Positions 9,139 to 28,483 of a stretch of 29,295 nucleotides of DNA are shown in pieces. The stretch is from positions 156,430-185,724 of the forward strand of contig NIVC01002298.1 of assembly GCA_002269645.1 (NCBI GenBank), read 5' to 3'. Each line of letters opens with the position of its first letter. Position 1 is the stretch's first letter. The stretch is from Macrostomum lignano. Taxonomy: Eukaryota. The notes beneath the pieces were generated by a model that was not told the origin of the DNA, ran no database searches, and saw nothing but the letters and a program-made list of their open reading frames with translations. A program made the position numbers and the translations under genes.

Positions 9139-9197
<59 letters not shown>

Positions 9198-10665: not shown

Positions 10666-10718
10666 CAAACACTAGGGCATTTTTTATACATTGAAGTCCT
10701 GACAAATTGAGATCCCAA

Positions 10719-11168
10719 TCATCTTTGCCTGTGCCGGGAAGACGCTGCCGCAGCCATGGGTTCAATGTCGGAGTCGTCGCTGTCGCTGGGTGGCACTCGG
10801 TCGTCACCGCCTGCGGCGGCAGCTCTGTCCTCGCCTTCTCCGGCGTTCTCGCTCAGTACAACATATTCGCGCGAACTGTAGCCGAATTTAAGTACGTCGC
10901 GTTCTTTTAATTCAATATAACGCCGAGCTTCGACGCGCTCGCCGTTGAGGTAGGTGCCGTTGGCGGACTCCAGGTCGATGATGTACGGCTTCACCAGCCG
11001 CGACTTGCTGCCGTCCGGCTGCTCCAACTCCACCAGCCGGTACTGCAGGGCCGCGTGCTGCTTGGAGATGGACGGGTGGTCCATCGGGATGTCGGCCACC
11101 TTGCGGTCCTTGCCGATCAGGTAGCCGCTCTGCCGGTGCACGTACAGCGGCTTCATGGCCTCCTCGCC
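10719..11168 (-). CDS. SNIP1: SNIP1/Pml1/DAWDLE-like FHA-domain protein, last exon
   Basis: GEEAMKPLYVHRQSGYLIGKDRKVADIPMDHPSISKQHAALQYRLVE..VKPYIIDLESANGTYLN..YIELKERDVLKFGYSSREYV closely matches the SNIP1 FHA as I recall it; acceptor CTCAG|GGC in phase 0. Confidence 0.95.
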   Translation of the reverse strand, partial: GEEAMKPLYVHRQSGYLIGKDRKVADIPMDHPSISKQHAALQYRLVELEQPDGSKSRLVKPYIIDLESANGTYLNGERVEARRYIELKERDVLKFGYSSREYVVLSENAGEGEDRAAAAGGDDRVPPSDSDDSDIEPMAAAASSRHRQR

Positions 11169-11289
11169 CTGAGGTGGGTGGGGAAAGGGGAATTTAGTGA
11201 GGATCTGGGATGATCCGGGTTTTGGTTTAGGAATATGTTGGCTTATATTATCTCTATTGATGATCTGAAAGGTTTCAATTTTCTGGCCT

Positions 11290-12895
11290 GAGGATCAGGG
11301 AGGCTGGCCAGCAACTGGGGATCTGGGAGGCTGGAACAGCAACTGACACTCTGGGAGGCTGGCTCAGCACCTGAGGATCTGGGAGGCTGGTTCAGCAACT
11401 GAGGAACTGGGAGGCTGGCCCACTTAGCTGCAGGGCGGTCCGAAGACGCAGCGGGGAGGCGAGCATCGCCCATTCCGCTAGGAGGCTGGCTCAGCAACTG
11501 AGGATATGGGAGGCTGGTTCAGCAACTGGGGATCTGGGAGGCTGGCCCAGCAACTGAGGATCTGGGAGGCTGGCCCAGCAACTGAGGATCTGGGAGGCTG
11601 GGCCAGCAACTGGGGATCTGGGAGGCTGGCCCAGCAACTGGGGATCTGGGAGGCTGGCCCAGCAACTGAGGATATGGGAGGCTGGGGCCAGCAACTGAGG
11701 ATCTGGGAGGCTGGCCCAGCAACTGGGGATCTGGAAGGCTGGGCCCAGCAACTGAGGATCTGGGAGGCTGGGCCCAGCAACTGAGGATCTGGGAGGCTGG
11801 GCCCAGCAACTGAGGATATGGGAGGCTGGCCCAGCAACTGAGGATCTGTGAGGCTGGCCCAGCACCTGAGGATCTGGGAGGCTGGCCAGCAACTGAGGAT
11901 TTGGGAGGCTGGGCCCAGCAACTGGGGATCTGGGAGGCTGGTTCAGCAACTGGGGATCTGGGAGGCTGGTTCAGCAACTGGGATCTGGGAGGCTGGGCCC
12001 AGCAACTGAGGATCTGGGAGGCTGGGCCCAGCAACTGGGGATCTGGGAGGCTGGCCCAGCAACTGAGGATATGGGAGGCTGGTTCAGCAACTGGGGATTT
12101 GGGAGGCTGGCCCAGCAACTGAGGATATGGGAGGCTGGGGCCAGCAACTGAGGATCTGGGAGGCTGGCCCAGCAACTGAGGATCTGGGAGGCTGGGCCCA
12201 GCAACTGAGGATCTGGGAGGCTGGGCCGCAGCAACTGGGGATCTAGGAGGCTGGGCCCAGCAACTGAGGATCTGGGAGGCTGGGCCAGCAACTGAGGATC
12301 TGGGAGGCTGGGCCCAGCAACTGGGGATCTGGGAGGCTGGCCCAGCAACTGAGGATATGGGAGGCTGGCCCAGCAACTGGGGATCTGGGAGGCTGGCCCA
12401 GCAACTGAGGATATGGGGGGCTGGCCCAGCAACTGAGGATCTGGGAGGCTGGCCCAGCAACTGACACTCTGGGAGGCTGGCCCAGCACCTGAGGATCTGG
12501 GAGGCTGGTTCAGCAACTGAGGATCTGGGAGGCTGGCCCAGCAACTGAGGATCTGGGAGGCTGGGCCAGCAACTGGGGATCTGGGAGGCTGGCCCAGCAA
12601 CTGGGGATCTGGGAGGCTGGTTCAGCAACTGAGGATATGGGAGGCTGGCCCAGCAACTGAGGATTTGGGAGGCTGGGCCCAGCAACTGGGGATCTGGGAG
12701 GCTGGCCCAGCAACTGAGGATCTGGGAGGCTGGGCCCAGCAACTGAGGATCTGGGAGGCTGGGCCCAGCAACTGAGGATATGGGAGGCTGGCCCAGCAAC
12801 TGAGGATCTGGGAGGCTGGCCCAGCAACTGAGGATCTGGGAGGCTGGCCCAGCAACTGAGGATCTGGGAGGCTGGGGCCAGCAACTGGGGATGTG
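11290..12895. repeat. ~1.6-kb intronic minisatellite, ~29-30-bp unit CAGCAACTGAGGATCTGGGAGGCTGG(G)CC(C)
   Basis: About 55 variant copies inside SNIP1 intron 11169-12925. Confidence 0.96.
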
Positions 12896-12925
12896 GGAGT
12901 CCCAGTGCACCCCAGAAGCCCTCAC

Positions 12926-13499
12926 CTTGAACGGATAGAGTCGCCAGCGCTTCTTGGGCATGCGGGCGTTGGCGGGCTCGCTGTACTTGATGAGCACACC
13001 CTTGTACATGTTGGTGTCCTCGGCCAGCTTGCCGGAGAGCCCCATGTTGGCCATCTGCTTGGGTGGCGGCGGCGGCTTTTTCTCGTCGGGCTCTTCGCCG
13101 GTTTCAGATTTCACTCGCTGCTGGTCCGGGCGGCCCCACTCGAACCGCTGCTGCTGCTGGCGATGCTCGCGACGGCCGCGGCCTCTGCCACCGCCACGCC
13201 GCCCCCGCGCTCCCGACGGGTGTCAAAGCGGTCAGCAGACCGAGAGCGCGATCGCTCCTTCGTCGCGGCTGGTCTTCGTCGCGCTGCTGACTGTGCCGAT
13301 GGTGCTCGCGGCGTCGGGCATCCCGGTCCCGATGGTCCCGCTGAACCCGATCAGCGTCGCGTTGGTCGACAGCATCGTCAGGCCGATGCTGGTGGCGGCG
13401 GTGGTGGTGGCTGTCGGAGTCGCCGCGTCGCCTCGGCCGCCGGTCCGTGTCGTCGAGTTCGCGGTGGCGGCTGGCCTGGAGTGGATCGAGTTCGGCAGA
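12926..13499 (-). CDS. SNIP1: SNIP1 upstream exon (R/H/D/S-rich region plus LSGKLAEDTN..WRLYPFK), with two apparent 1-bp deletions (~13253, ~13197)
   Basis: MGLSGKLAEDTNMYKGVLIKYSEPANARMPKKRWRLYPFK is the conserved pre-FHA segment; donor AAG|GTGAGG at 12926/12925; acceptor TTCTTCCCAAATCCCCAG|TCT at 13500/13499. Confidence 0.88.
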
Positions 13500-14524
13500 C
13501 TGGGGATTTGGGAAGAATCTTGCCCGATCCCAAACTATTCTAGTCAGTTACCAAGGGCCTCTTGCGCCACAATCAGGCGGCTTAGTTTGCTTTCCAATAA
13601 AGAACTATTTGCTTGAATGATTTACTATGGAACATAATTTTAGCCATTTTGTAACAATAAAATTCTATGGCCAAAAGCTATACATGATAAGAAGCAAATA
13701 GCAAAATAAGTTATAAAAATGAAGCCACTCCTAAAAGCACAAAAAGACAACAGAATGATAATAAGCAGAAGAGGCTATCAGAGCAATAGAGCCTTTTATA
13801 TAATTTTAAAAAAGTTATATGAAGAGGTTGCAATTAGGGATTGCAATCAATATGATTATAGGACTGGGCTCTTAAATCCATATTTAAGCTCATAAATCCC
13901 AAGACAAAACTATGTTTCTTCCATAACAAATGCAAAAAACTGAATTCATATATCATTTTATTTCCTATATTCTATATGCTTCATTAATGCTTAATACTCT
14001 GCTAAACTCTATAAATTGTCTTGCTACCACTGATTTCTTTATGTATTTATAGGTTGGACTATAAATTAATAAATTATTAGGACAAAAAAAGCTATTTCAA
14101 AACAAATATTATTGCCAAAATTGTAATTGTAAGACCATAGAAATATAGAAATTGACAAACTCATCATAAGATTTTAAATTGTAGATTAATTAAAAGCTAA
14201 AAGCTGATATATTTGTATTTCATAATTCTAAGAAAAAAATACTTCGGTTAGGTATAGCTTTTACTAAGCTTTAAAATTTTGATTCAGAAGCTTAAAAATC
14301 TTTTTTTGATCCCAAGATTAGCTAATCACTAATCTTAAGCTAATCTAAACTAATTAAAACTTTAAAGAATTAGACTATAGTATAAAATCTAGGATATGCT
14401 AGATATTTAGGCCTATTAATTGTTTATTTCATTTTTTCCAAACATGGTATAATAAGTAAATTTTCCTTTTCCTATTATAACCTTTATAGGATTGTAACTT
14501 ATATTACAATCTGTAATCTGCAAG

Positions 14525-15760
14525 CTTCTGCAAATCAACGCACGCAAGACGGAAGTGCTGCACGTGGGCACCAATGCAGCACCAATCCTGACCCTACCAG
14601 ATGGACAAATCATTTCAGCCTGCAGAGACTTCCGGTACCTGGGCTCCCTCGTGATGAGCCCTGACTCCATCATCGCCGACCAGAGGTCACAGGCCTGGCG
14701 CGCGGCTCATCTCCTTAGGGAGGTCTTCAGCTCAGCTGCCAACGACGACCTGAAGATGCGCCTGTTCCGCGCTGCCGTAGAGCCAATCTTCCTGTACAGA
14801 CTGGAGGCAGTGCCAATGACCGACTCGAGGTCCCGAGCCCTGGACGCTGCCTACCGATTGCTGCTGCGGTTCGCCCTTGGCATCCATTATCCAGAGCGGC
14901 TGCCGACGGACCAGCTGATGGCGAGAGCCCGTGTGCCTCAGCTCAGTGCCACTCTCCAGCGGCACTGGCTAATGCTCGTCAGCCACTGCCTCCGCAGCTA
15001 TGGCAGAGGAGAGCAAAACCTGCTGGCGCTAACCCTGCTGCATCAGCCAACCGAGCGTCTCCGACGGGGCCAAGCAGTGGTGTGATTGGAAGTTTGCCAA
15101 ATTTCGCGCCGACTGAAAATTTCGCGCCATGCCAATAATATTCTACTGACAGCCAAATAAGTCAATTGATGACACTTTTGAAGATGCGTCTGGTTACCAA
15201 TTAGCATATCTCTTAAGTCACAGCCGTGTCCCCCTGAACTTCTTGTTGGCGATGTCTGCAGGCAGACGACTGCTCTGCTCGTGCTGGTGATTGATGACGT
15301 TGACAGCAGCTCAGCAGCCTTGCGCTTTAAGACGAGCTCAGCTAGCTTCTCTGCCTCCTTCTGTTTCTTCTTCTGCTGCTGACGCCTGAGATTGAACTCA
15401 GTTTGTTAGATTAATCTCCTAAGCTATACATTCTTGTATTTCATACTGTCTGACAAGAGAATAAGTGTAAAAAGCAGAAAATAAGAATGCAATTTTCGCG
15501 CCCATGTTCCACAAAATTTCGCGCCAGACCCCCAGGATTCGCGCATTCGCGCCATTTTTGCGCCTGGCGCGAATTCGCGCCTGAATCACACCACTGGGCC
15601 AAGGCCAGACTGTCACGCTGACCGCCACGCTTGAGTCTGACCTTCAAGCCATTAACCTGACCCCACAATCTGCAACAAACTGTCCTTCTCGTCTCTTCTG
15701 CGAGCGCGCGTGCGCGCAAGACGCCCACCATAATATCTTTGCGTCCTTATATATATATAA
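14525..15760 (+). mobile_element. 5'-truncated non-LTR retrotransposon fragment (RT C-terminal/thumb region, RTE-like), interrupted by a MITE
   Basis: LQINARKTEVLHVG..FRYLGSLV..KMRLFRAAVEPIFLYRLEA.. are typical late-RT motifs; the frame resumes after 15603 as ..RRGQ/GQTVTLTATLESDL. Clade assignment is inference. Confidence 0.85.
15075..15596. mobile_element. Non-autonomous hAT-type MITE, 522 bp
   Basis: Perfect 13-bp TIRs CAGTGGTGTGATT (15075-15087) and AATCACACCACTG (15584-15596); flanking direct repeat GGCCAAG (8 bp GGGCCAAG if one G is missing on the right); clustered TTCGCGCC subterminal motifs at both ends. Confidence 0.88.
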
Positions 15761-15935
15761 CTTATATAATCTATATTTTATTATACTATTATACTTTTAT
15801 ATTATTAATCCAATATTCATAAAATAAAATTGATTAAAAATTAGGCCCTAATGAAATAATATATATTAATATATATTAATTAAAATAGCTCCAATAATTT
15901 TATCTTACTATAGGCCTACATTACCTTTATTAATA

Positions 15936-17250
15936 CGAGGGGTGATCAAAAGTTCTGCAAGTGACCTCACAACTCAGTGCTACAGCAGCCGAGGCGTCTA
16001 ATCAGTGTCACATTCCCTTAAAGTACTTTCCACCACTATCTATGCACCGTCGCATGCGTGTGCACCATGTCTGAAAGCAGTCATGGTACTCCAGAGTTGG
16101 TATACCCTGTAGAGCTGAATGTACCGCTTGGGCAAAGTCTTGCATGCGTGAAAACGGCCTCCCAGAAACGACGGATTTGATCCTCAGGAACAGCCAAAAG
16201 TCGGAAGGTGCTAGTCTAGAGAGTAGGGTGGATGGGGCAGCAGCCGGACCCCTGCTGCTCCAGGTACGCCATGGTTGATGCCGCCCTGTGCGGTGCCACA
16301 TTGTCATGGTGCAGCAGGAGTCGAGGTCCATGCCTGGTTTGCGCACGTTCCTGCCGCTCCTGCAGCACGCCTGGCAGAACAGTGTCTGTGTAGTACCTGG
16401 CAGTCACTGTGGCACCCGCTGGAAGGATGTTTACCGATACAACACCCTGAGAGTTGAAAAAATGGTGAACATCCGCTTCCGACTGCGGAATCTAGTCTTC
16501 AGCACCTCAGGCCTTGGCTCATCTTCTGCCAGCCAGACCATGTCAGACTGCTTATCCTTCATGGTAAAAGAAGGAGATCCAACATTTGTCTCCTGTGATG
16601 ACATCCAACAGTTGTTGTGGGCCGTGGGGCTCAAAAATTTGCAGCCACAAGCGACAGATGCGCACCCTCTCTGCTTGCTGCTCCGGAGTGAGAAGATGGG
16701 GTACCCACCGAGCGCAAGTCTTTGTGCGGCCTAGTTGCTCATGCATGATGTTATGAGCACTTCCATAGCTGACACCAAGCTCATAGGCAAGGAACCTCAG
16801 CATAATGCTCCAATCCTCACGAATTATTGCATCGGCATGGGCCACGACATCTTCGGTCACGGATGTCCGGGTCAGCCAGACCTCGGTTCATCGTTGAAGC
16901 TGTCCCAGCCTTCCAAGAAATGGCGCAGCCAGCGGGCAACTGTGTCAAATGATGGAGCAAAGTCAGCTAAAACATTCACAAAACATGGTGTGAATATCAG
17001 TCACTTTGCAACCAAGTTGCATGCACATAAAGATATAGAAGCGAACACTGTCTTTTGATGTTTCCATCAGCTACTGAAAACACATGGAAAATATATGGCT
17101 GTGAAATTTTACTGGGGCACATTTGGAAGCCAAAAATGCATATAAATATAGCAAACAGATATAGCCGCATATGTGTAAGTTTTCGGCTTTTGCTGATTCT
17201 ATAACTAAAAGCTATAACAAAAGGTTGCAGAACTTTTTGATCACCCCTTG
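15936..17250 (-). mobile_element. Mariner (Tc1/mariner, DD34D) element, 1315 bp
   Basis: TIRs CGAGGGGTGATCAAAAGTTCTGCAA (15936-15960) and TTGCAGAACTTTTTGATCACCCCTTG (17225-17250); TA on both flanks. Confidence 0.95.
16008..17067 (-). pseudogene. Frameshifted mariner transposase
   Basis: ATG at 17067; motifs WVPHLL, ITGD(K)CW and HHDNVAPH..HPPYSLDLAPSDFWLF (34-residue D-D spacing after restoring two 1-bp deletions); split across four ORFs, with an in-frame stop near the first HTH. Confidence 0.93.
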
Positions 17251-17788
17251 TAATATATCATATCATTGTCTTGATATTGATCTATGACAATATTTTTTCA
17301 ACATTAAAATAGCCTAGGGCAGGGGCCTATTTGTTGCATAGGAAATTTTGCAATAATATACATAAGTCCCATATATAAATTAGCAGCCAACTAGGATTCT
17401 AGGAAGAGATACACATTAAACCTGGCTAGTCAAACCACTTAGGCCTAGTTTTAGTTAGATATTATAAATATAATGCATTTGGAATGGAAAACAATATAAA
17501 ACAATATATTTTAAAAAACTAATTAAAGAGGTCTTGTATTTAAATGCATTTTATGTGCTAATAAAAAGATTAATTAATTTATACTCAAACTGAGTCAAAG
17601 GTGTTTGATATTAGCTGGATATTATCTTCTAAGATGACTAAGATTCAAGACTAAAGACACAGGGGCAGATCTAGGATGAGCTGAGGGCAGAGAGTGCACA
17701 CCCATCAGAATTGCACATTACAGATATAAGATTCCATTTAATGTCAGATTGCCAGTATTACAATATACTAATGTACATCATACATGGG

Positions 17789-20700
17789 CCATAGTGCAGA
17801 AGGACGGGTGTACGACGGAAATTTCCGTCGTACATTGAGGTTGGTTGTCGTACATGTCGTACATCGTTCATTTTTGCAAGGGCTCTTTGTCGTACATGTC
17901 GTACCGTCGTTGGCCACACTGTCACTGTCGTACATCTCTGACTAGAAAGCTATATGCATAGGCATTTAAAAATACAATTTCGTTTTCATAATTAAATTAA
18001 ATTTATTCAAAGTTCTTTTTACGAGGCACAAATAAAATATAATCTTGGCATACTTAATAATAATTTTTTATTATGTGGCACCAAATTTCACATTTTTATA
18101 TTCAAGGCCACACAAATGTGCATCCGTTGTTTTAATCTTAACCTTGTTTATTTCTTTTTTGAAATGCGTATCGTTGTATCGTGTTACTGGGAATTGAATT
18201 GTGAATGTGAATTAATTCATAATCATCTGATCTTGTAATTCTCGTCCTCCGGTCAGTCTCGTCTCTCGTGATCGTGATGTGATCTAAGATAAGATCTGAT
18301 CTGACTAATGTCTTTTGTCTTATCCCTTATAACTTTTACTTTTCTATAATCTATGGCTATGCACTCTGCACTGCACTAGCACTATATACTATACTACAAG
18401 CTACAACTAAAAGTAACTTTTAAGTTTTCTTAATTTGTTGCAAAACTTAAACTAGCAATTTGTAATTTTTCAACTTTGACAAGTAAATTTATTAGTAGTT
18501 AGTACGAGTAACAAGTTGAGTAATTAATTAAGTTGAGACTGTTGAGTTGAGTTGCATGTTGCATTGTTGCAGTTGACTCATTGACTTTGACTGTTGACAA
18601 ATGACAAGGTCAACTGTCAAGTGACACTTGTGACAGTTTGTTGTTTGAGACTTTGAGTTAGTGAAAGTGACTAGTGACTGACTGACTGGTCTGTCTGACT
18701 GACTGACTCGTGTCTCGTGTCTGTGTCTGTCTGGACATCTGGTGATTCTTTCAAGTTTATTTTTTAAACATTTTATCACTTTTACCTTCATAAATTAGTT
18801 CTAGAACTTCTAGTGTTCTGTTCTAATTCTAGTTCTTAACTTAACTTCTTGTTCTTAATCTTAGTTGCAAGTTTTTATTTTAAAAGTTCAAGTTGTCAGT
18901 TGTGTAATTTCACAATTTCAGTAATTGAGTTGACATTAGACAAGTTTATAAAATTATCTTATCACTTTCTTTTAATAATTAGTAATTAATTAATTAAATG
19001 CATTTTTTATTTGTCAAATTTGACTTTACTTGACAAGTTGAAGTTGACAGTTGAGTACTTGAGTATTGAGTAAAGACATAGTAATTAAGTTGACAGCTAT
19101 GGCTTATTGCTTGGCTTGAAACCAACAAATATTTCTTACGAAATAACAAGTAGAAGTAGCTAATAGCCATCTAGCCAAGAGACACCAAGTTTTGCTTCGT
19201 TTCATGAAAGAAAAGAAGTGAATATATATAAATTAGGGCCTACTGCAAGTCTGCAACTAATTTGAGACAAAACTTCAGGTGCTTGGCAGCAACTTTAGCA
19301 AATACAACTTCCAAGTTGACTTGACATTGACAAGTGTATAAATTTATCTTATTACCTTTACTTTTAGTCTTTTAGTAATTCTAAATTCATAGCAAATTTT
19401 GCTATTGTATTGTATTGTAAGTTGACTAGATTGAGTAATTGAGTTGTATAAAATTATGCAATTGATTATATTTGGTAGAGTTGAGTAGAACATTTGGTAG
19501 AGCTAGATTGTAGAATGGTACAGTATAGTATATGAAATTATTTTATAAAAAAAACAAAATATATTGAAATGTGCATTAATTATATCCTATTACTAAATGT
19601 CTAATCTTTATTTCCTAAATTTCTATAAGTATAATTATAATTATTTATTTAATTTTTGTAAACAAAACCATATTTTTATTCAACTGATAACTAGTTTGGT
19701 TTATGCTTACTTATTGATTAGATTTGGTCATAACTAATAATACTAAATTAAATGCTGATTGCCAAAAAAATTAACTTGTCTTTCAGCTAAATTCAGCTAT
19801 TCAGCATTTGCTTTTTGATTTATTGTGCCAAAATTAATCTCTATAATGTCTCGTAGCAGTAGCACATCAAGTTCTGGCTCTGAAGAAAATCAGTCTGAGA
19901 CAGAGACACCACTAGCTGCAGCTTTGCAAGCTAGTATCCAGGACCAGGCTGACCAGGCAGAGCCAGAGGCAGTAGTAGAGAAGGCGAAGGCTGCTGAGTG
20001 TGCTTGGGCCCATATGCCAATCATGCAACAGGCACAGCGGCAACGCCAACAGCAACAGGCTAATGTGCAAGTACAAGCAAAATCAAAGCGTCCACTGAGT
20101 TTGTCTCATGCAGCGTCTTCATCTGCACAAACTGAAGAGCCACCAACTAAGAAGCCTCGCGGAACTGTGTGTGACCCACATTACTGTGTGGATTGCCTTC
20201 AGCGAGGGCTTCCACTGTCCAACTGCCGCATTTATCGAAACAATGGTAGTAGCAGAAAAACTCATCGGAGTCGCTGGCACAAAGAAGACCCAGCCAATAA
20301 GATTTTAACATATTGCAGACCTGACCATGCTGATGTTCGCGACCTAATTGCTGCCAGGCCTGCCAATGAGAATGAGAAGCAGGTAAAAAAACGCATCACA
20401 AAGGCCATGGTCAGCCATGAGGTGCTGGAGGTTGAAAGTGCCAGTGATGAAGAGTCACCTGAACGTCCTGAAGTTCCAATGACCACTGAGCCTGAGGCAG
20501 AGCAGCAGCAGTCTGAGGGACCAAAGACAAATCTGGTAGTAAACATTGAAGTACTGGAATCATCCGCCGTTGACCAAAGATCCAGCTCATTTGTTAGGCA
20601 GCTTGCTGATGCTTCACCTATCCTTCCCAGTCCTGCTGAGGCTGCATCTACAGCATCATCAAGCACGTCAGGTCGGGATCTTTTGGCAATTGTCACTGGG

Positions 20701-23700
20701 CTGGAAATTAAAATGGCGGAGGCAGCCCGACAACTTGCCCTACTTCCGATTATACTAAATGTTGTTCGGGACTTGGCGCTGTCACAGGCTACCTCCAGCT
20801 CAAACTCTCGGGGACAAAACTTACCAAAAGTGCCGCCAATTGTGGCTAGCAACATGGCCGAGCTCCTGGAGAACGAGATGCTCGCCACAGCACCTTGCGG
20901 TGAGGACACAATTTTATACTGTGTCCCGTGCTACAACGTTTTAATGGAAGGCACGGCCTTCTCGCCAAAGTTGACTGTTGCGGAGAGGCACAGCACTTTG
21001 TAAGTCCATTGTATGTACTTTTATCTAACAGGCAATAAGACAATCCAGTTGGCCTTTTCCATTTATTTATTATAAACTTTCATTTCTCTAACTTCTTATA
21101 GAAACCCCAAGTCGATGGGCACGCTTGCACGAGGGCAGCTCATTACAAAGCTGGAAATGACTGAGATCCTTGCGTGTGGCGAGGCATTCTCCCGGCTTCG
21201 TTATAGGATAGTGAAACATCTCTCTGGTATCGAGGCTGTCGGCCATGTGAAAGCTATGAAGAAGTATGCGGACCGCAAGATTGAAGAGAAGCGCGTCTCA
21301 GGAACTGTTCGGCGCCTTTTGCGTTGCTCTGTTGCCAATATCGAATCAGCGTCAGCTAGTAAGCACTATGAGACGTTCGTGAGCATGCTTTATCGGTCGG
21401 ACGCTGAAGTTGGCCAGCGGGGCCACGGCCGGTATGTACCATATTATGTGGTTTGTATCTGTATGCCATTAGCTAAGCTATGGTTATTTTGTACGCTATT
21501 TGTTAATTTACCACCCACTATGCATCCAACTAGGGAGTTTAACAAGGAGTTGTGGTCGTTGTTTGAGGTCACCGCTGACAAGTATACGGCTGAGTTCCTG
21601 CAGACCCCACTGCCGTCCACCGGATGTCCTCCCTGCTACGCCATTGCTTGCGACAAAAGCACACCAGGTCGCATCACTAACCAAGCTGTTATGGTGTTGG
21701 CCAGGTAAGTAGGGAGGAAGAAGGAAAAGTAATGTACATTAGGAGTATCCGCCACTTAAATATTACTTTTACTACCTCCTTAAAACGGATAACCCCTAAC
21801 AGGTGCGAGACTGGTGACGCCGTTGCTATCCCAGGTGGCGCCCCGGCCGTTTATTCCAAAGAGATGGACGGCAGCGGCCCCGTTCTGGTGCAGCGGCTTT
21901 TTCAAGGTCTGGCGAACTTTGATTTGCCCATTGATCGTCTTGTGGGCGTCATTGCCGACGGGCAATATCAAACTGCGCCTTTTAAAACGGCAATATTTGA
22001 GAAGCTGAAGGAGGCCGGAGCCGACTATGAGATCCCAATTAACTGGGACCCGGCCCACTTTATAAACCTGGCCGTGACTAACGTGCGCGATAGTGACGAC
22101 GGAGAGGCGTTGCAGGATTTTATTGACAGGGCAAACCTGTTTCCGCATCTTTTTGGCCACGGGCGTGGCCGTTCGGCTTTGGAAGTAAGTATGCAACCTG
22201 AATGTCTAACTGAATAGTTTACCGAGGGTTTTAGATATACGTTTGCTATAAAACTACTCCAAATTCTTTGTTTGTAAAAAAACAGATTGCTTCCGAGGAC
22301 CATGCCGGAGCAATTTCATCATTTGCCTCGCAGCGCTTTACCAGTTCAGCCATGAACCAATGGCAGACCATCTTTCGCTGCTACGGCGATCTGCATGCCG
22401 CATTTCGAGCCGAGAAACCACGAGTCAGAGATAACGACCCACAGCCGTACATAATGTTCGGATTTGATTTTGTGTGCGACTTGTTGGGCTACCTGGATCT
22501 CTTTGCGCCAATCAAGTAAGTTGATTTATATGCCTTGTGGGTAGTAAAATTACTATGGGATCAACTTTTTGATTACCTACTTACTCCAAACACATAACAC
22601 TTGCACAGAGCTCTTATGGAGATTGCGCAGAATCTTCAGCTGCCCCACTGGAAAGTGTCTACCTTATGGCCATTGGTAGCTGAGTTCCTCCATGTCCATG
22701 CAGAGCAGTTTCGTAGTGAGGACTACCCCACGCTGCATGAGCACATCGACAATCTGCACGTTGGTGGCACATTTGATGGCGTGACTCTGCTGGACGGCTG
22801 GCTCAAAGTAAAAAAGCCGGTTGCTGGCTCTGCCTCTGACCAGGATCAGTGGCGCGCTCGAGACATGGAGGTAAGCTTGTGCAATCATTATATTATGTAC
22901 TCTGCCAAAGTTACCATATTCTCCTTTGTGCTTCATTATTCAGCTCCATCCTTCTTCCTCCTTCCTCAGGACATTGCACGTGATACACAGAAGCTTGCCG
23001 GGGCACTTCACCGCAGCTTCGTTGCTCGCATTCAACGCTGCTGCGACCCGAGCACCTCTGATTGTGCCTCCTTCGATGCAGCTGCCATCATCCGTGCCAT
23101 TGCATGCAGGGACCCTGAAGTTGCAGCAGAAGAGTTTGCAGACCAGTGCGCTCCCGCCTTTAAGCGGCTTGTGACCGAGGCAGTCAAGCATAAGCACCTG
23201 GCTCATCTGAAAGTTCCCATGGCCCGAAGGTGAGCTCCTTCACAATCAAAACTATAAATGCACTGGTACTATAACTAGTGTGAGGCTGGAAATCACATAT
23301 TTCAAGACCACTTTGCTACAGAAAAATGTAACGAAATCGAATTGTATTTAATTTTATTTTTTGTCCACTAAACTTAGGTATGCTGCGAACTTTGTGGACA
23401 CTATACGCCACGTCATTTTCACGGGTGAAGGCCGCAGTAGCTGGCTGGTGCCTTCCATCAACGGGCCACTGACGGATTTAAAAGTAGCAGCACCCACTTT
23501 GGCACGTCAGTTATTGCTGCATCTATCGGGTTCGACAGCAGGTGGTGAATTTTCATCTGTTGTGGTGGACGAAGCAGCAGTTTATGCGTCTTTCTATGCC
23601 GACCCAGACGTTTTCCAGCGAGCCGGCCCTGCAACATGTGCACTACTTGATTTTGCACTACACCGAGGTGGCACTGGTGAGTTGCAAATTCCAGTTGCTA

Positions 23701-24357
23701 TCTACAAATTAACTAATGTCACCTTGGGCAAGTCAGTCAGATTTGATCAGAATTTCATCTACATATTTTTCCGCCTTTTTCTTCCAGAAGCGATTGTCGA
23801 GAGCTTCTACTCGACTATGCGGTCGCAACAGCAACAGGGAGGCCAAACCAACGACACCCTTCAGCTTCGCGCTAAGTTAGCTTGGTTGCTACCACCCATG
23901 GGCGGCGATGCATGCGAAGAATTTCTCGACGACTCTGCGAAACTTTTTTTTAAAGGCGACAAAAGCCGTGGGATTCGTCCACATTGGAGTCCGTTTTTTG
24001 CTGCCAAAACTAAGGACGCCATCGGCAAGGTGCTGCAGAGGCGCGCAGCAGCTGTTTCCCGTGTGCCATTCATCGGCCGTCGGAAGCAGAAGCCCAAAGA
24101 CGGCGACAATAATGCCAATTGATAAATTCATTTAATTGAATCATTCATAATTAATATTACTTCAATTACTTGTAAACTTGTTATTACCACTTACAACTTA
24201 TTATTACTCTTTGTCTGGGTCGGGAGTATGTGGGTTTCTGCATTGTAGTTTGTCGTACAAAAAAAAATTACTTAGTTCACTTGTGTCGTACTGTCGTACA
24301 GCAGGCTAAAACTGAAATTTGCCTTCCGTCGTACACAGAAATCCTTCTGCACCATGG
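17789..24357 (+). mobile_element. Full-length hAT-like DNA transposon, 6569 bp
   Basis: Ends CCATAGTGCAGAAGGA..GTGTACGACGGAA versus CCATGGTGCAGAAGGA..GTGTACGACGGAA (reverse complement of right end); direct repeat TACATGGG at 17781-17788 and 24358-24365; multiple GTCGTAC subterminal repeats; internal DDE transposase gene. Confidence 0.88.
19846..24122 (+). CDS. Intact 9-exon hAT-like DDE transposase, ~1140 aa; exons 19846-20999, 21102-21431, 21534-21704, 21803-22184, 22286-22515, 22609-22870, 22970-23229, 23378-23676, 23788-24122
   Basis: All eight GT-AG introns join in phase by manual splicing (3423 nt, 1141 codons). Motifs: two CxxC..H..H zinc-finger-like segments, IACDKST (D1), VIADGQY (D2), WDPAHFINLAV (C/DxxH), SQRFTSS (RW-equivalent), TEAIVESFYS (E). 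Confidence 0.85.
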
Positions 24358-24551
24358 TACATGGGCAGTGCCGCAGTGGGAGCTAATGGAGCTTGCAGCA
24401 CCAGGGGCATGTGCCCCCCAGAAAATGAGTCCACGTGGTAATTTTTATTTTTTTTCAGATTTTAGGTCCTAATTAGCAGCTTATAAAGGTACCTGTGCCC
24501 CCTTGCCCTGTGCCTGGTGCCCCCCTCAAATATTAGGCTCCGCCGCCCCTG
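24358..24551. mobile_element. Probable short MITE that hosted the hAT-like insertion (left few bases remain at ~17776-17788)
   Basis: Right end reverse-complements to CAGGGGCGGCGGAG; left end CATGGGCAGTGCCG (9/14 match); internal GGGGCATGTGCCCC palindrome; direct repeat CTAATGTA at 17768-17775 and 24552-24559, although the left copy is offset by 7 nt. Confidence 0.4.
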
Positions 24552-25990
24552 CTAATGTACTTCCATAGAAAATAGGCAAGTTATATAATTTTATTGTGCT
24601 GCGTGTGCCACCCCTCTCATAAAACTTCAGATTCCACGACTGCAGAGAGCCAGACAAATTATGCATAAAAAATCTGGATTTTTCTGAAGTATTTTTTAAG
24701 TCTATTGTAATTTTTGTGTGGCGCACACTACTAGTTCTAAAATTGCACGTAACTGTGCAACTTTTCAATTGTAGGCCTATTGCTCATTGACATTGCATTG
24801 CTGGAACTTAAACTTTGTAATTTAAATTATCTAGATCGCTACTAAATCAAAGCAAGTCAAAGCAAATCAAAAATTCAGTAGTTAGTATACATCATGATTT
24901 ATGTACATCGCGCAACTTAGACTTCCGAATTCGAAACGGAGGCTGAGATTCCAAGAAACATAAGTGAAAAGAAACAAATTCTAGGCCTATCCGCAGGAGT
25001 AATGTTATTTTAGACTGGTGAGTCCCATACTTCTCTAGCGAGTAGCTAGTGTTGCAATTACAAAACTATTTTATTACTCGTAATTCCAGAAGTCAGCATT
25101 TTGTTTGAGCATTCAAGGATTAGCTGCTTTTCCACCGCTTTTCACATCAATTTAAGAACCAGAGTCAGTTCGGATCGGATCTTTGTAGAAAAAAACCGTA
25201 TAACTGTTTTAATTTGTTAAATGTTTGACTGCGTTATCAGGCTCACTTTGCACAATTATTTACTTTCTTGGCTATTCCCATTCAATAATTACAACTTTAC
25301 AGCACGTATATATCCTTCTAGTTTAGGAGAAAAAAGTTGTACTTCACAAATTGGATCTGGTTCTAGAACCAGAACAAGCACTATGAAGAGGCCCCATACT
25401 GTTAATGTGCAAATAAATATTTTTATAGTTCTAATTATCAAAGTAATCCAGTTTTTTCTTCTGGGATTCAATTACTATAGTCCAGTTCAGCCAAAACTTA
25501 CGATATTCACGTGCATAAAGTACGAGTAACATGCATGCATTTATATTTACATGTAGCATCCAAGGACTACTCTAGTAGAATGACAGGAAATTACGTTTCT
25601 TGAAAATTTTAGAGGCAGTTTTTACCTAAAAATACATTATGGAGATAGGTTTTCTTTTTTAAACAGAAAATTTTTGGTTTTTGATAGGAGACAGACCCTA
25701 TGCTTATTTTTGATGTGTTGCCTTCCCTATCGCTCTATTGATCTTCATAAAGTTTTTCATCTATAAAAGTATGATTCTATGTTAATTTTATATCCTAGGT
25801 ACATGTTTTCTTTCTTTTCTAACGTAGCCATCAGTAATGAAACAATCACATGCGTAATGTTACGCATTCATGTAGGCATGTAGAAAGAGTAAACAAAGGA
25901 CGCATTTATATTTTCAGCAGGAGCATATAAATGTAACAGTGGCATATTATTCGCACAGCAGCGTTAATGTACAACATTGCAGCCCAAAGC

Positions 25991-26263
25991 TCAGAGCACA
26001 AACGGTATAAGGCCCGTCTGTCAGCAGGGAAGCTGCTGCCAAACTGTTGCCTGTACCACGCGTGCGAGAGCAGGGCGCTGGCCGACTGGTTCACCAGGAC
26101 AAACAGCAGCAGGTGAAACAGCAGCCCGCCACCCCGCCGCCGCCGCCGCTGACGAGGCAAAACAAATTCAGGTAGATAAGCATCTCCAGGTTGTAATGGG
26201 GCGACGACAGGTAGCGGAACAGGTGACCCTGCGGCAGCAGATGCTTGCGGTGAATCACCGCGC
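25991..26263 (-). CDS. SRD5A3: Polyprenol reductase (SRD5A3/DFG10 family), last exon, with two apparent 1-bp deletions (~26133, ~26010)
   Basis: AVIHRKHLLPQGHLFRYLSSPHYNLEMLIY then, after a frameshift, LLFVLVNQSASALLSHAWYRQQFGSSFPADRRA then, after a second, IPFVL*; parallels the SRD5A3 C-terminus (H.IP.G..F.YVSSP.Y..E..IY..NQ..SA..SH..Y..KF..YP..RKA..PF). Acceptor TTTTTTCCTCTAG|. Confidence 0.85.
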
Positions 26264-26321
26264 CTAGAGGAAAAAATTACAAGCATTAAAACCGAGTTTT
26301 AAGAAGACAAGAAGCTTAATG

Positions 26322-27222
26322 AAATGAGGATTTGGGAATATAAACAGATTAGGGAAATGGGGATTCGGAAGATAAACAGATTAGGAAAATGGGGATTTGG
26401 GAAGATAAACAGATTAGGAAAATGGGGATTCGGGAAGATAAAAAGATTAGGGAAATGGGGATTTGGGAAGATAAACAGTTTAGGGAAATGGGAATTTATG
26501 AATATAAACAGATTAGGGAAATGGGGATTTGGGAAGATAAACAGATTAGGGAAATGGGGATTTGGGAAGATAAACAGATTAGGGAAATGGGGATCTGAGA
26601 AGATAAACAGATTAGGGAAATGGGATTTGGGAAGAAAAACAGATTAGGGAAATAGGAATTTTGGGAATATAAACAGATTAGGGAAATGGGGATTTAGGAA
26701 TATAAACTGATTAGGGAAATGGGGATTCGGGAAGATAAACAGATTAGGAAAATGGGGATTTGGGAAGATAAACAGATTAGGAAAATGGGGATTCGGGAAG
26801 ATAAAAAGATTTGGGAAATGGGGATTTGGGAAGATAAACAGTTTAGGGAAATGGGAATTTATGAATATAAACAGATTAGGGAAATGGGGATTTGGAAAGA
26901 TAAACAGCTTAGGAAAATGGGGATTTGGGAAGATAAACAGATTAGGGAAATGGGGATCTGAGAAGATAAACTGAACAGATTAGGGAAATGGGGATTTAAG
27001 AAGATAAACAGATTAGGGAAATGGGGATTTGAAAAGAAAAACAGGTTAGGGAAATGGGGATTTGGGAATATAAACAGATTAGGGAAATGGGGATTTGGGA
27101 AGATAAACAGATTAGGGAAATGGGATTTGAAAAGAAAAACAGGTTGGGAAATGGGGATTTGGGAAGAAAAAACAGATTAGGGAAATGGGGATTTTGGAAG
27201 AAAAACAGATTAGGGAAATTAG
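26322..27222. repeat. Intronic minisatellite, ~33-bp unit GGGAAATGGGGATTTGGGAAGATAAACAGATTA
   Basis: About 27 variant copies filling SRD5A3 intron 26264-27310; higher-order duplication visible (blocks at 26330-26600 and 26680-26970). Confidence 0.95.
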
Positions 27223-27417: not shown

Positions 27418-27756
27418 CTGTACTCTGCCATCGGCAATTCAAATACTCGATGAAATTTTCATTCTTATAAAGATATCCCCGTGTGGCCATCTGATCAGGT
27501 TTTTCGCCCGGTAGGCGATCGGGATTTTTGCCCGGTTTGTAATACATTTTTTCCTATCTAAAAACCCGAAAATCCTCGGGAAAGTGGTCTCGAAAACGGA
27601 CGAAGACGGCAGTTTCGTCTGGTTGTTCGTCAGGAATTTCGTAGAGGACATCAGGTATTTTCTCGGGTTTCTCTTCGGCTACTCAAACTGATGAGTACCC
27701 TGAATAAAACCCGACAAATGACCGGATGAAAGTGCAATAGCAGAACCCGGCAAATA

Positions 27757-28483
27757 ACCGGGGCAAAATCAGACTAAAACCTAACGAAAGCGACACGACG
27801 ATCAAACCGGACGAATACCCGGAGCAAAATCAGACTAAAACCTAACGAAAGCGACACGACGATCAACGGACGAATACCCGGAGCAAAATCAGACTAAAAC
27901 CTAACGAAAGCGACACGACGACCCAACCGGACGAATACCGGAGCAAAATCAGACTAAAACCTAACGAAAGCGACACGACGACCCAACCGGACGAATATCT
28001 GGAGCAAAATCAGACTAAAACCTAACGAAAGCGACACGACGACCCAACCGGACGAATATCCGGAGCAAAATCAGACTAAAACCTAACGAAAGCGACACGA
28101 CGACCCAACCGGACGAATATCCGGAGCAAAATCAGACTAAAACCTAACGAAAGCGACACGACGACCCAACCGGACGAATATCCGGAGCAAAATCAGACTA
28201 AAACCTAACGAAAGCGACACGACGACCCAACCGGACGAATATCCGGAGCAAAATCAGACTAAAACCTAACGAAAGCGACACGACGACCCAACCGGACGAA
28301 TATCCGGAGCAAAATCAGACTAAAACCTAACGAAAGCGACACGACGACCCAACCGGACGAATATCCGGAGCAAAATCAGACTAAAACCTAACGAAAGCGA
28401 CACGACGACCCAACCGGACGAATACCCGGAGCAAAAACAGACTAAAACCTAACGAAAGCGACACGACGATCAAACCGGACGAA
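27757..28483. repeat. Tandem array, 61-bp unit CCGGAGCAAAATCAGACTAAAACCTAACGAAAGCGACACGACGACCCAACCGGACGAATAT, ~12 copies
   Basis: Register shifts by 1 nt per 60-nt line from 28021 to 28381; units are head-to-tail with no unique spacers. Confidence 0.95.

What the first reader, a model, noticed from the sequence alone, without database searches (positions are those of the whole stretch)
17789..24357. Complete, apparently intact hAT-like transposon with an 8-intron transposase gene
Seen: TIRs, an 8-bp TSD and a 3423-nt spliced ORF with no stop or frameshift. Its eight introns are strikingly uniform (102, 102, 98, 101, 93, 99, 148, 111 nt), AT-rich and free of the minisatellites that fill host introns here. 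Knowledge: characterised hAT transposases (Hermes, hobo, Tol2, Ac) have few or no introns. Inference: a young, potentially active, unusually intron-rich and divergent lineage, possibly an unclassified family.
Basis: partly seen in the sequence, partly recalled or inferred. Interest (0 to 1): 0.8.

Follow-up and report, generated by a model that had tools for sequence, protein, structure and literature searches.

The report
Active Hermes-like DNA transposon in flatworm
This is a complete 6.6-kb cut-and-paste DNA transposon of the flatworm Macrostomum lignano, found as five byte-identical copies at different sites. Its eight-intron gene encodes an enzyme that folds like the housefly Hermes (hAT) transposase but belongs to an unannotated animal-wide protein family, so it is a very recently active, unclassified relative of a known kind of mobile element.

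Summary
The element spans 17789-24357. It has 16-bp imperfect terminal inverted repeats, a perfect 8-bp target-site duplication, and a 3423-nt ORF interrupted by eight GT-AG introns of exactly the stated sizes.

The spliced 1140-aa protein is identical to GenBank models (PAA45963.1 and three others) from the RNA-seq-derived M. lignano annotation. Four other genomic loci carry the same 6569 bp with 0 differences. Each has unrelated flanks and its own perfect 8-bp duplication, so transposition was very recent.

The protein has no Pfam or PDB sequence match. It does have 584 homologue clusters in flatworm, crustacean, tunicate and cnidarians, and the ten looked up by name carry only 'uncharacterized' or 'hypothetical'. 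An AlphaFold model (pLDDT 92) matches only Hermes hAT transposase structures confidently (Foldseek top 10, probability 1.0).

The inferred catalytic residues are D535, D604 and E1034, with a D634-x-x-H637 motif where hAT has CxxH. An invariant N-terminal C2H2 finger and 11 terminal GTCGTAC repeats complete a Hermes-like architecture.

Verdict: a hAT-like autonomous transposon, recently and probably currently active. It represents a deep, unclassified clade: a new variant of a known kind. Repbase and Dfam could not be checked.

The parts
17781..17788 (.). Left copy of the 8-bp target-site duplication (TACATGGG)
   Evidence: Identical 8-mer at 24358-24365. Four other insertions have their own perfect 8-bp duplications at the same junctions.
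17789..17804 (+). Left terminal inverted repeat, CCATAGTGCAGAAGGA
   Evidence: Matches the right end at 15/16 positions. Homology among the five copies begins exactly at 17789.
17805..17935 (+). Left subterminal region with 7 copies of GTCGTAC. It includes a perfect 26-bp palindrome at 17808-17833 (TGTACGACGGAAATTTCCGTCGTACA) formed by two inverted copies.
   Evidence: All 11 GTCGTAC copies in the 29-kb window lie within about 150 bp of the element ends; 0.77 are expected by chance and 0/100 shuffles reach 11.
17936..19845 (+). AT-rich (about 31% GC) non-coding 5' region. It is presumed to be the promoter and 5' UTR; function is inferred only.
   Evidence: No ORF longer than 87 aa. The region is identical in all five copies.
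19846..20999 (+). Exon 1 (residues 1-385). It holds a low-complexity N-terminus, a basic stretch, the C2H2 zinc finger C114/C117/H140/H145 (nt 20185-20280) and a second CxxC at 359-362.
   Evidence: The four zinc ligands are invariant in 10 homologues from several phyla.
21000..21101 (+). Intron 1 (102 nt, GTAAGT...TATAG)
   Evidence: The junction is present in the GenBank model, which is identical to the spliced ORF.
21102..21431 (+). Exon 2
21432..21533 (+). Intron 2 (102 nt, GTATGT...CTAG). It is in-frame and free of stop codons, and is retained in one public gene model (P0001).
   Evidence: Homologues have no residues here.
21534..21704 (+). Exon 3. It holds the first catalytic Asp, D535 (nt 21652-21654), in the motif ACDKST on strand beta-1 of the RNase H-like fold.
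   Evidence: D is conserved in 71/74 homologues. The strand is at 196-203 of the model.
21705..21802 (+). Intron 3 (98 nt)
21803..22184 (+). Exon 4. It holds the second catalytic Asp, D604 (nt 21957-21959, motif IADGQY), and the D634-x-x-H637 motif (nt 22047-22058, WDPAH).
   Evidence: Conservation is D604 66/72, D634 66/70 and H637 63/70.
22185..22285 (+). Intron 4 (101 nt)
22286..22515 (+). Exon 5. It marks the start of the all-alpha insertion domain and carries the R696-F697-x-S-S motif (nt 22334-22339), which is positionally like the hAT 'RWNS' motif.
   Evidence: Conservation is R 60/65 and F 56/64. The Hermes sequence PTRWNST was verified against PDB. The equivalence of the two motifs is inferred.
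22516..22608 (+). Intron 5 (93 nt)
22609..22870 (+). Exon 6. It lies in the insertion domain and holds the nearly invariant W770 (nt 22649-22651).
   Evidence: W is conserved in 63/65 homologues.
22871..22969 (+). Intron 6 (99 nt), in-frame and free of stop codons
22970..23229 (+). Exon 7 (insertion domain)
23230..23377 (+). Intron 7 (148 nt)
23378..23676 (+). Exon 8 (end of the insertion domain). Its last base is the first base of the E1030 codon.
23677..23787 (+). Intron 8 (111 nt), in-frame and free of stop codons. It splits the codon of the conserved E1030.
   Evidence: E1030 is conserved in 67/77 homologues, which supports the junction.
23788..24122 (+). Exon 9. It holds the catalytic Glu, E1034 (nt 23799-23801), in VESFYS, the conserved GGQxNxTLxxR and SKVxxR motifs, and the stop codon TGA at 24120-24122.
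   Evidence: E1034 is conserved in 66/75 homologues. It sits in helix 697-709 of the model.
24123..24251 (+). 3' untranslated region
   Evidence: Sequence. No ORF. Inferred.
24252..24341 (+). Right subterminal region with 4 copies of GTCGTAC. Their arrangement and orientation differ from the left end.
24342..24357 (-). Right terminal inverted repeat (reverse complement CCATGGTGCAGAAGGA)
   Evidence: Homology among the copies ends exactly at 24357.
24358..24365 (.). Right copy of the 8-bp target-site duplication (TACATGGG)

Best explanation
The element is an autonomous class II (cut-and-paste) DNA transposon of Macrostomum lignano that moved very recently and is probably still mobile.

Shown:
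- Its single gene is transcribed and spliced at eight introns into an mRNA for a 1140-aa transposase.
- The core of that protein (residues about 335-1140) is predicted to fold like Hermes, the structurally characterised hAT transposase. It has an RNase H-like domain, a large mostly alpha-helical insertion domain splitting it, and a C-terminal helix that returns the last acidic residue to the active site.

Inferred by analogy with Hermes:
- The N-terminal C2H2 finger (C114, C117, H140, H145) reads the GTCGTAC subterminal repeats, which are arranged differently at the two ends.
- The body of the enzyme binds the 16-bp terminal inverted repeats.
- D535, D604 and E1034 coordinate metal ions to cut the ends, in hAT elements through a hairpin on the flanking DNA.
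- The freed 3'-OH ends attack target DNA 8 bp apart, and repair of the gaps gives the 8-bp duplication seen at all five insertions.

Phylogenetically the protein belongs to a deep clade spread across Metazoa. No current sequence model assigns this clade to hAT. It is either a very divergent hAT lineage or a sister group within the C/DxxH transposases.
For: Boundaries and mobility:
- Five copies are byte-identical over 6569 bp, with unrelated flanks and five different perfect 8-bp duplications.
- The inverted repeats match at 15/16 positions.
- All 11 GTCGTAC repeats lie within about 150 bp of the ends (0.77 expected). They are asymmetric between ends and form a 26-bp palindrome at the left end only. 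This parallels the Hermes left-end quasi-palindrome bound by two BED domains (PMC10368747).

Gene and expression:
- The spliced ORF is identical to GenBank models built from StringTie/TACO RNA-seq assemblies.
- All eight junctions fall in model blocks with mean pLDDT of at least 92.
- The codon of the conserved E1030 is created by splicing.

Fold:
- AlphaFold pLDDT is 92 and pTM 0.88.
- The Foldseek top 10 are all Hermes (4d1q, 6dww, 8sjd, 8edg), with E down to 9e-7, probability 1.0 and target-normalised TM 0.42-0.60. Next come ISCth4 at 6e-3 and RAG1 at 0.15. No P element transposase appears among the 50 matches listed.

Active site:
- D535 lies on beta-1, D604 after beta-4, D634-x-x-H637 after beta-5 and E1034 on the post-insertion helix. 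All are 88-96% conserved.
- The D-to-D spacing is 69 aa, against 68 in Hermes (D180 and D248 are from my knowledge; the sequence was verified).

Family:
- 584 representative clusters score E<=1e-3.
- Named members occur in M. lignano, Hyalella azteca, Styela clava, Sanderia malayensis and Clytia hemisphaerica.
Against: - There is no sequence-level link to hAT. Pfam gives nothing for 38 members, including the hAT dimerisation, DUF4371, DUF659 and zf-BED models.
- The family profile finds no Hermes sequence in PDB at E<=10, and hhalign of the profile against Hermes gives probability 1%.
- The motif is DxxH, not the hAT CxxH.
- The termini start CCAT, not the usual hAT YARNG (my knowledge).
- The five target duplications do not fit the Hermes nTnnnnAn preference (T at position 2 in 1/5, A at position 7 in 1/5).
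- The N-terminal finger model has no structural match.
- Foldseek TM normalised to the query is only 0.30-0.38, because the protein is much larger than Hermes.
- No transposition event was observed directly, and the catalytic residue assignment was not checked on a 3D superposition.
Confidence: 0.85

Rival explanations
1. The element belongs to another C/DxxH cut-and-paste superfamily (P, Kolobok, MuDR/MULE or Dada) rather than to the hAT lineage.
For: It has a DxxH rather than CxxH motif. DxxH is reported for Dada and occurs in the wider group. P elements also make duplications of about 8 bp. There is a weak Foldseek hit to the IS256-family ISCth4 transposase (E 6e-3). Dada genes are likewise intron-rich, with 11 exons.
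Against: - The Foldseek top 10 are all Hermes, and no P element transposase is among the 50 matches listed.
- No THAP, Tnp_P_element, MULE or SWIM Pfam hit was found.
- Kolobok makes TTAA duplications (my knowledge), against five different 8-bp duplications here.
[quoted passage not shown] This element has inverted repeats, 8-bp duplications at unrelated sites and 430 aa between those residues.
- The Dada protein alignment contains none of this family's signature motifs: DGQY, TNQA, PSTG, ESFY and RFSS are absent, and DKST occurs once, in an unrelated C-terminal position.
Confidence: 0.08
2. The five copies are products of segmental duplication, polyploidy or assembly redundancy in M. lignano, not of transposition, and the gene is a host gene.
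For: [quoted passage not shown] The gene has eight introns like a host gene (average 4.9-5.0 introns per gene). It is annotated as a hypothetical protein, and homologues occur across Metazoa.
Against: Identity stops exactly at the inverted repeats in every copy. The flanks share no similarity at E<1e-10. Neighbouring genes differ between loci. Each copy has its own 8-bp direct duplication. These are the signatures of insertion, not of block duplication.
Confidence: 0.02
3. The element is structurally intact but no longer mobile. This could be because it is silenced by piRNAs or because the transposase is inactive, with the identical copies stemming from one very recent burst that has ended.
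For: No transposition was observed. M. lignano has an active piRNA pathway that silences transposons (PMC4604429). Three in-frame retainable introns could yield variant proteins.
Against: There are zero substitutions in 5 x 6569 bp. The ORF, inverted repeats and catalytic residues are intact. A fully spliced transcript is present in the RNA-seq-derived annotation.
Confidence: 0.3

Closest known systems
Hermes (Musca domestica), hAT superfamily; structures 2BW3, 4D1Q, 6DWW, 8EDG, 8SJD
   Same: - It is the best and only confident structural match.
- Both have an RNase H-like DDE core split by a large alpha-helical insertion domain.
- The D-to-D spacing is 68-69 aa.
- Both have an xxH motif after beta-5, an R-aromatic-x-S motif at the start of the insertion domain and an E-[RS]-x-[FY]-S motif carrying the glutamate.
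- Both have an N-terminal zinc finger, short imperfect inverted repeats (17 bp against 16 bp), an 8-bp duplication, and asymmetric subterminal repeats with a palindromic pair at the left end.
   Different: - Structure-based identity is only 9-11%, and no sequence or profile method links the two proteins.
- The motif is DxxH instead of CxxH.
- The protein is 1140 aa against 612 aa, with a roughly 330-aa low-complexity N-terminus and a bigger insertion domain.
- It has eight introns; Hermes has none (my knowledge).
- The termini begin CCAT.
- The target duplications do not follow nTnnnnAn.
Ac (maize) and Tol2 (medaka), the intron-containing hAT elements
   Same: Both are autonomous hAT-type elements with a spliced transposase gene, subterminal repeats required in cis, and 8-bp duplications (for the end requirements; the rest is my knowledge).
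   Different: Ac has 4 introns and Tol2 has 3 (my knowledge), against 8 here. Both are expected to be recognised by Pfam hAT models (not run here), whereas this family is not.
Dada superfamily (Kojima and Jurka 2013, PMC3706591)
   Same: Both have a DxxH motif after the second Asp, a long multi-exon transposase gene (11 exons, 1402 aa in Dada-U6_DR) and a distribution across aquatic animals. Both were missed by BLAST-level searches.
   Different: Dada lacks terminal inverted repeats, makes 6-7-bp duplications, targets snRNA and tRNA genes, and has CCCC and CCHC fingers and a short D-to-E spacing. It shares none of this family's signature motifs.
P element / THAP9
   Same: Both make duplications of about 8 bp. 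Both belong to the C/DxxH group and have an RNase H fold with an insertion domain.
   Different: This element has no THAP domain and no Pfam P-transposase hits. No P element structure appears among the 50 Foldseek matches listed.

Membership tests
hAT superfamily | 8-bp target-site duplication | tested here: met
   Five independent insertions each have a perfect 8-bp duplication.
hAT superfamily | Short (about 10-25 bp) imperfect terminal inverted repeats | tested here: met
   The repeats are 16 bp and match at 15/16 positions. Copy homology ends exactly there.
hAT superfamily | Terminal 5'-YARNG consensus at the transposon tips (feature recalled from my knowledge) | tested here: not met
   The tips read CCATA and CCATG.
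hAT superfamily | Target preference nTnnnnAn (Hermes; PMC10368747) | tested here: inconclusive
   T at position 2 occurs in 1/5 sites and A at position 7 in 1/5 sites. This is a preference rather than a rule, and only five sites were available.
hAT superfamily | Hermes-type fold: an RNase H-like DDE domain interrupted by a large all-alpha insertion domain | tested here: met
   The AlphaFold model has pLDDT 92. The Foldseek top 10 are all Hermes, with probability 1.0 and E down to 9e-7.
hAT superfamily | CxxH motif shortly after the second catalytic Asp | tested here: not met
   The family has W-D-x-[ASG]-H, with D in 66/70 and H in 63/70 members. This fits the broader C/DxxH signature of hAT, P, Kolobok, MuDR and Dada.
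hAT superfamily | C-terminal hAT dimerisation domain detectable by sequence (Pfam PF05699), together with the other hAT models (DUF4371, DUF659, DUF4413) | tested here: not met
   No such hit was found in the query or in any of 38 family members at E<=1. The only resemblance is at motif level: VESFYS against Hermes SERTFS.
hAT superfamily | Detectable sequence homology to a bona fide hAT transposase | tested here: not met
   phmmer and profile hmmsearch against PDB sequences find no Hermes at E<=10. hhalign of the family profile against the verified Hermes sequence gives probability 1%.
hAT superfamily | N-terminal BED-type zinc finger | tested here: inconclusive
   The pattern C-x2-C-x12-22-H-x4-5-H has all four ligands invariant in 10 homologues. 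There is no zf-BED Pfam hit. The finger model (pLDDT about 85 over residues 11-50) has no Foldseek match.
hAT superfamily | Clusters of short subterminal repeats near both ends, arranged asymmetrically | tested here: met
   There are 11 GTCGTAC copies, all within 150 bp of the ends, with different orientation patterns at the two ends. Binding by the finger was not tested.
hAT superfamily | Excision through a hairpin on the flanking donor DNA | not testable with these tools
   This needs biochemistry or footprint sequencing.
P superfamily | THAP DNA-binding domain and P-type transposase with a GTP-binding insertion domain | tested here: not met
   No THAP or Tnp_P_element Pfam hits were found. 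No P element transposase is among the 50 Foldseek matches listed.
Kolobok | TTAA target-site duplication (my knowledge) | tested here: not met
   The duplications are five different 8-mers, none of them TTAA.
MuDR/MULE | MULE transposase domain (often with a SWIM finger) and usually long inverted repeats | tested here: not met
   No MULE or SWIM Pfam hit was found. The inverted repeats are 16 bp. The IS256-family ISCth4 is only a weak structural match (E 6e-3), behind ten Hermes chains.
Dada | No terminal inverted repeats, 6-7-bp duplications, insertion in snRNA or tRNA genes, and the Dada motif set | tested here: not met
   This element has inverted repeats and 8-bp duplications at unrelated sites. 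The family's signature motifs are missing from the Dada alignment; the one DKST string there lies in an unrelated C-terminal position.
Zisupton/KDZ | KDZ-type transposase domain (8-bp duplications are shared) | tested here: not met
   No Pfam hit of any kind to the core in 38 members. That Pfam holds KDZ models is from my knowledge.

The most novel reading that the evidence does not exclude
The clade (584 or more 50%-identity clusters across flatworms, crustaceans, tunicates and cnidarians) is a previously unnamed superfamily-level lineage of eukaryotic cut-and-paste transposons. It would be sister to hAT within the C/DxxH group, defined by the signature DK[SA]T ... DGQY ... WDxxH ... RFxSS ... 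ESxYS. The M. lignano element would be a currently active member, and therefore usable as a native transposon vector in a transgenic flatworm model.
Probability: 0.3. Interest if true: 0.7.

Novelty: new variant of a known kind. Interest (0 to 1): 0.55.

Why it matters
M. lignano is described as the only flatworm with stable transgenesis (PMC8717057 abstract). Foreign transposon vectors have had mixed results there: Minos did not integrate by transposition (PMC5730564), and piggyBac is at the proof-of-principle stage.

A native element with five identical copies, defined 16-bp ends, defined subterminal repeats and a known spliced transposase mRNA is a ready candidate for insertional mutagenesis or gene delivery. 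It is also a possible source of instability in laboratory lines.

More broadly, a large, animal-wide transposase family is currently labelled 'uncharacterized' or 'hypothetical' wherever its members were looked up, and is invisible to Pfam. It can now be annotated as Hermes-fold transposases. That improves repeat masking and gene annotation. It also adds a deep branch, with DxxH in place of CxxH, for reconstructing how the hAT, P, Kolobok, MuDR and Dada transposases are related.

Tried and rejected
- **Word-index protein searches.** The search with the full protein, the full-length alignment and a trimmed core alignment returned only 2, 2 and 6 proteins. Only the 8000 candidates sharing most words are scored, probably crowding out true relatives. 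The exhaustive HMMER search was what revealed the family.
- **Contig look-ups.** Look-ups for P0001, P0002 and the exon-1 ORF found nothing. The full spliced protein worked.
- **Sequence links to hAT.** Pfam, PDB phmmer, PDB profile search and hhalign against Hermes were all negative.
- **N-terminal finger.** Its fold search gave no match.
- **Paralogue intron positions.** I tried to map them for P0006 in L001. The locus matches that protein only at about 94% in places and the exon map was unreliable, so I dropped it.
- **Derivatives.** A search for the inverted repeat in all fetched loci found only the full-length copies and no miniature derivatives.
- **Papers not held.** Yuan and Wessler 2011 and Bao et al. 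2009 were unavailable. Arkhipova 2017 had none of the terms.
- **Literature on new superfamilies.** Searches for a description of this family found none.
- **UniRef names.** The names of the M. lignano models (SET, SWIM, HECT, DUF4371, TPR 'domain-containing') were not reproduced by Pfam scans, and I disregarded them.
- **AGTTGA word.** Its enrichment in the 5' region is not significant window-wide.


Full report
**1. The observation**

- The element starts with CCATAGTGCAGAAGGA (17789-17804) and ends with the reverse complement of CCATGGTGCAGAAGGA (24342-24357), a 15/16 match. It is flanked on both sides by TACATGGG.
- An ORF starts at ATG 19846. Removing eight GT-AG introns of 102, 102, 98, 101, 93, 99, 148 and 111 nt gives 3423 nt, which is 1140 codons plus TGA ending at 24122.
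- The introns have 29-39% GC and the exons 53%.
- Tandem Repeats Finder reports no array between 15802 and 26321, whereas large minisatellites fill the rest of the window.

**2. Organism and gene model**

- The protein's only close database relatives are Macrostomum lignano proteins.
- One cluster member, P0183, is identical residue for residue to my spliced ORF. It corresponds to GenBank PAA45963.1, PAA49331.1, PAA83209.1 and PAA93563.1, 'hypothetical protein BOX15_Mlig017020g1 / Mlig015791g5'.
- The GenBank annotation of assembly Mlig_3_7 was derived from RNA-seq. StringTie and TACO assemblies plus a de novo transcriptome were used, and ORFs were called by TransDecoder (PMC5730564). The eight junctions therefore have transcript support, although I did not see the reads.
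- Independent support comes from three observations. Homologues from other phyla align straight across every junction. All junctions lie in structure-model blocks with mean pLDDT of at least 92. The codon of the conserved E1030 is assembled by splicing intron 8.
- An older public model (P0001) retains intron 2 in frame.

**3. Mobility**

- Looking up the exact protein returned four loci on different contigs of GCA_002269645.1, with different neighbouring genes.
- Each locus contains window 17789-24357 with zero differences over 6569 bp, and similarity ends exactly at the predicted termini.
- The flanks share no similarity with each other or with the window.
- Each copy has its own perfect 8-bp direct duplication: TACATGGG (window), AAGAGAGC, GCACAGGT, CAGCCCAT and ATTAGGCC.

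This rules out segmental duplication or assembly redundancy. It fixes the duplication length at 8 bp and shows that transposition is too recent for a single substitution to have accumulated in about 33 kb of compared sequence.

**4. The ends**

- All 11 copies of the heptamer GTCGTAC in the 29-kb window lie in the terminal 145 bp (left, 7 copies) and 106 bp (right, 4 copies) of the element. Chance expectation is 0.77, and 0 of 100 shuffles reach 11.
- The copy nearest each tip extends the inverted repeat. The others have opposite orientation patterns at the two ends.
- At the left end two copies form a perfect 26-bp palindrome (17808-17833) with no counterpart on the right.
- Hermes has the same layout. 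It has 17-bp imperfect inverted repeats and short subterminal repeats arranged asymmetrically. A left-end quasi-palindrome is bound by two BED fingers (PMC10368747).

**5. The protein**

- *Sequence methods say nothing.* There is no Pfam family above noise for the query or for any of 38 family members. There is no PDB sequence hit by phmmer or by a family profile.
- *The family is large.* The exhaustive HMMER search found 584 representative clusters at E<=1e-3, of which 225 score <=1e-10.
- *Where members carry names, they are animals.* Several M. lignano lineages are 25-43% identical to the query. Other members come from Hyalella azteca (amphipod), Styela clava (tunicate), Sanderia malayensis and Clytia hemisphaerica (cnidarians). 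All are 'uncharacterized' or 'hypothetical'.
- *The alignment defines a signature*: an N-terminal C-x2-C...H-x4-5-H finger with four invariant ligands, then PLPSTG-x-PP, DK[SA]T...TNQ, DGQY, WDxxH, RFxSS, GxDF..DL, Q...P.WK, GW, G.EA..ES.YS, GGQ.N.TL..R and SKV..R.

**6. Fold**

- AlphaFold2 on residues 335-1140 with a 145-sequence alignment gave mean pLDDT 92 and pTM 0.88.
- The strand and helix order around D535, D604 and D634 is beta1-beta2-beta3-alpha-beta4-alpha-beta5-alpha, the RNase H-like order. It is followed by about 330 mostly helical residues and then the helix carrying E1034.
- In Foldseek against the PDB, the ten best matches are all Hermes transposase chains (4d1q, 6dww, 8sjd, 8edg). 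E ranges from 9e-7 to 3e-4, probability is 1.0, 464-704 columns align, Hermes-normalised TM is 0.42-0.60 and identity is 9-11%.
- The next matches are the IS256-family ISCth4 transposase (6e-3) and RAG1 (0.15). No P element transposase appears among the 50 matches listed.
- I verified the Hermes sequence against PDB entry 8EDG (610/612 of my recollection correct) for motif comparison:

| Feature | Hermes | This protein |
|---|---|---|
| First to second Asp spacing | D180 to D248, 68 aa | D535 to D604, 69 aa |
| xxH motif after beta-5 | CSSH | DPAH |
| Start of insertion domain | TRWNST | QRFTSS |
| Motif carrying the Glu | SERTFS | VESFYS |

The Hermes residue numbers are from my knowledge, and the equivalences are inferred rather than read from a superposition. 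hhalign of the family profile against Hermes found nothing, so the relationship is visible only in structure and motif order.

**7. Classification**

- The C/DxxH motif between the second Asp and the Glu is the shared signature of hAT, P, Kolobok, MuDR and Dada (PMC10045372; PMC3706591).
- Kolobok is excluded by its TTAA duplication (my knowledge).
- P is excluded by the absence of THAP or P-transposase domains and of any structural match.
- MuDR is excluded by the absence of MULE or SWIM domains and by only a weak IS256 structural match.
- Dada is excluded by its lack of inverted repeats, 6-7-bp duplications, small-RNA gene targets and short D-to-E spacing, and because none of this family's signature motifs appears in the Dada alignment.
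- hAT fits on duplication length, inverted-repeat type, subterminal repeats, fold and motif order.
- hAT fails on every sequence-based criterion, on CxxH (here DxxH), on the terminal YARNG consensus and, with only five sites, on the nTnnnnAn target preference.

I therefore call it hAT-like: it works like Hermes. It is either a very deep hAT lineage or a sister group. It should not be filed as an ordinary hAT family without a phylogeny.

There is also indirect evidence that it was unclassified in 2017. The Mlig_3_7 GenBank annotation excluded transcripts overlapping repeat annotations, and the repeat library dropped unclassified models. This gene was nevertheless kept at four loci.

**8. The introns**

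- Eight introns is high compared with the characterised hAT elements (my knowledge). It is close to the host average of 4.9-5.0 introns per gene.
- The introns themselves, at about 100 nt, are much shorter than the host mean of 1.1-1.4 kb.
- Intron-rich transposase genes are known in the related Dada superfamily, with 11 exons. The feature is notable but not unprecedented.
- One oddity remains. Introns 2, 6 and 8 have lengths divisible by three and contain no in-frame stop, so retaining them would insert 34, 33 and 37 residues rather than truncate the protein. The per-intron chance of being stop-free is 0.11-0.20 by shuffling.

**9. Context**

The element sits in a repeat-rich intergenic stretch on the plus strand.
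- To its left are a degraded mariner (Mos1-like) transposase on the minus strand at 16008-16860 and an FHA-domain gene.
- To its right is an ORF at 25906-26286 (minus strand) with a sub-threshold Pfam match to steroid 5-alpha-reductase.

**10. Verdict**

This is an intact, expressed and very recently mobile autonomous DNA transposon. Its transposase has the Hermes fold but belongs to a large, unannotated metazoan family.

It is a new variant of a known kind. Interest is moderate. The mechanism is conventional, but the element is a strong candidate for a native flatworm transposon tool, and the family fills a gap in transposase classification. Repbase and Dfam were not available, so prior naming there cannot be excluded.

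Noticed in passing
window 21432-21533, 22871-22969, 23677-23787: Introns 2, 6 and 8 have lengths divisible by 3 and no in-frame stop codon. Retaining them would give in-frame insertions of 34, 33 and 37 residues. One public gene model (UniRef A0A1I8FS65 = P0001) does retain intron 2. The per-intron chance of being stop-free is 0.11-0.20 by shuffling. This may be coincidence or tolerance of, or regulation by, intron retention.
   Followed up: partly
window 17808-17833: A perfect 26-bp palindrome (TGTACGACGGAAATTTCCGTCGTACA) made of two inverted GTCGTAC subterminal repeats occurs only at the left end. It resembles the Hermes left-end quasi-palindrome bound by two BED domains.
   Followed up: partly
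window 16008-16860, minus strand: A degraded mariner-type transposase is split into at least two ORFs. It matches Mos1 transposase (E 2.5e-8) and the SETMAR transposase domain (E about 0.01). It lies about 900 bp left of the element.
   Followed up: partly
window 10719-13114, minus strand: A host gene has an FHA domain exon at 10719-11156 (Pfam FHA, E 3.7e-17). A 28/84-nt minisatellite (11288-12899, about 58 copies of the 28-nt unit) lies between it and an upstream ORF start, and stays open in one frame for 531 codons.
   Followed up: no
window 25906-26286, minus strand: This ORF has a sub-threshold Pfam hit to the C-terminus of 3-oxo-5-alpha-steroid 4-dehydrogenase (E 5e-4, 20.5 bits against a cut-off of 22.6). 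It is probably the last exon of a host gene to the right of the element.
   Followed up: no
window 357-2291, 4145-5062, 7201-7548, 26321-27219, 27753-28483: The window holds very large tandem arrays: a 14-nt unit x143, an 8-nt unit x117, a 29-nt unit x12, a 33-nt unit x27 and a 61-nt unit x12. The first two have strong strand-composition skew.
   Followed up: no
L001 (M. lignano NIVC01003249.1) 10001-15985; proteins P0006, P0159, P0032: A paralogous M. lignano lineage of the same family (about 28% identity) has lost key residues: DGQY has become EGYY and WDxxH has become SDAAA. It is present in several gene models, so it is a dead or possibly co-opted branch of the family.
   Followed up: partly
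GenBank annotation of GCA_002269645.1 (loci L002-L005, gene at 6001-10277 in each): The transposase is annotated four times as a 'hypothetical protein', even though the annotation pipeline discarded transcripts overlapping classified repeats. UniRef names for related models (SET, SWIM, HECT, TPR, DUF4371 'domain-containing') were not reproduced by Pfam scans and look misleading.
   Followed up: partly
window 17936-19845: Nearly 2 kb of AT-rich (31% GC) non-coding sequence lies between the left end and the ATG. It is built of short recurring words (GTTGAC, AGTTGA, TGACTG) without a tandem period, and its role as promoter or 5' UTR is unknown. AGTTGA is not enriched window-wide against shuffles.
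   Followed up: partly
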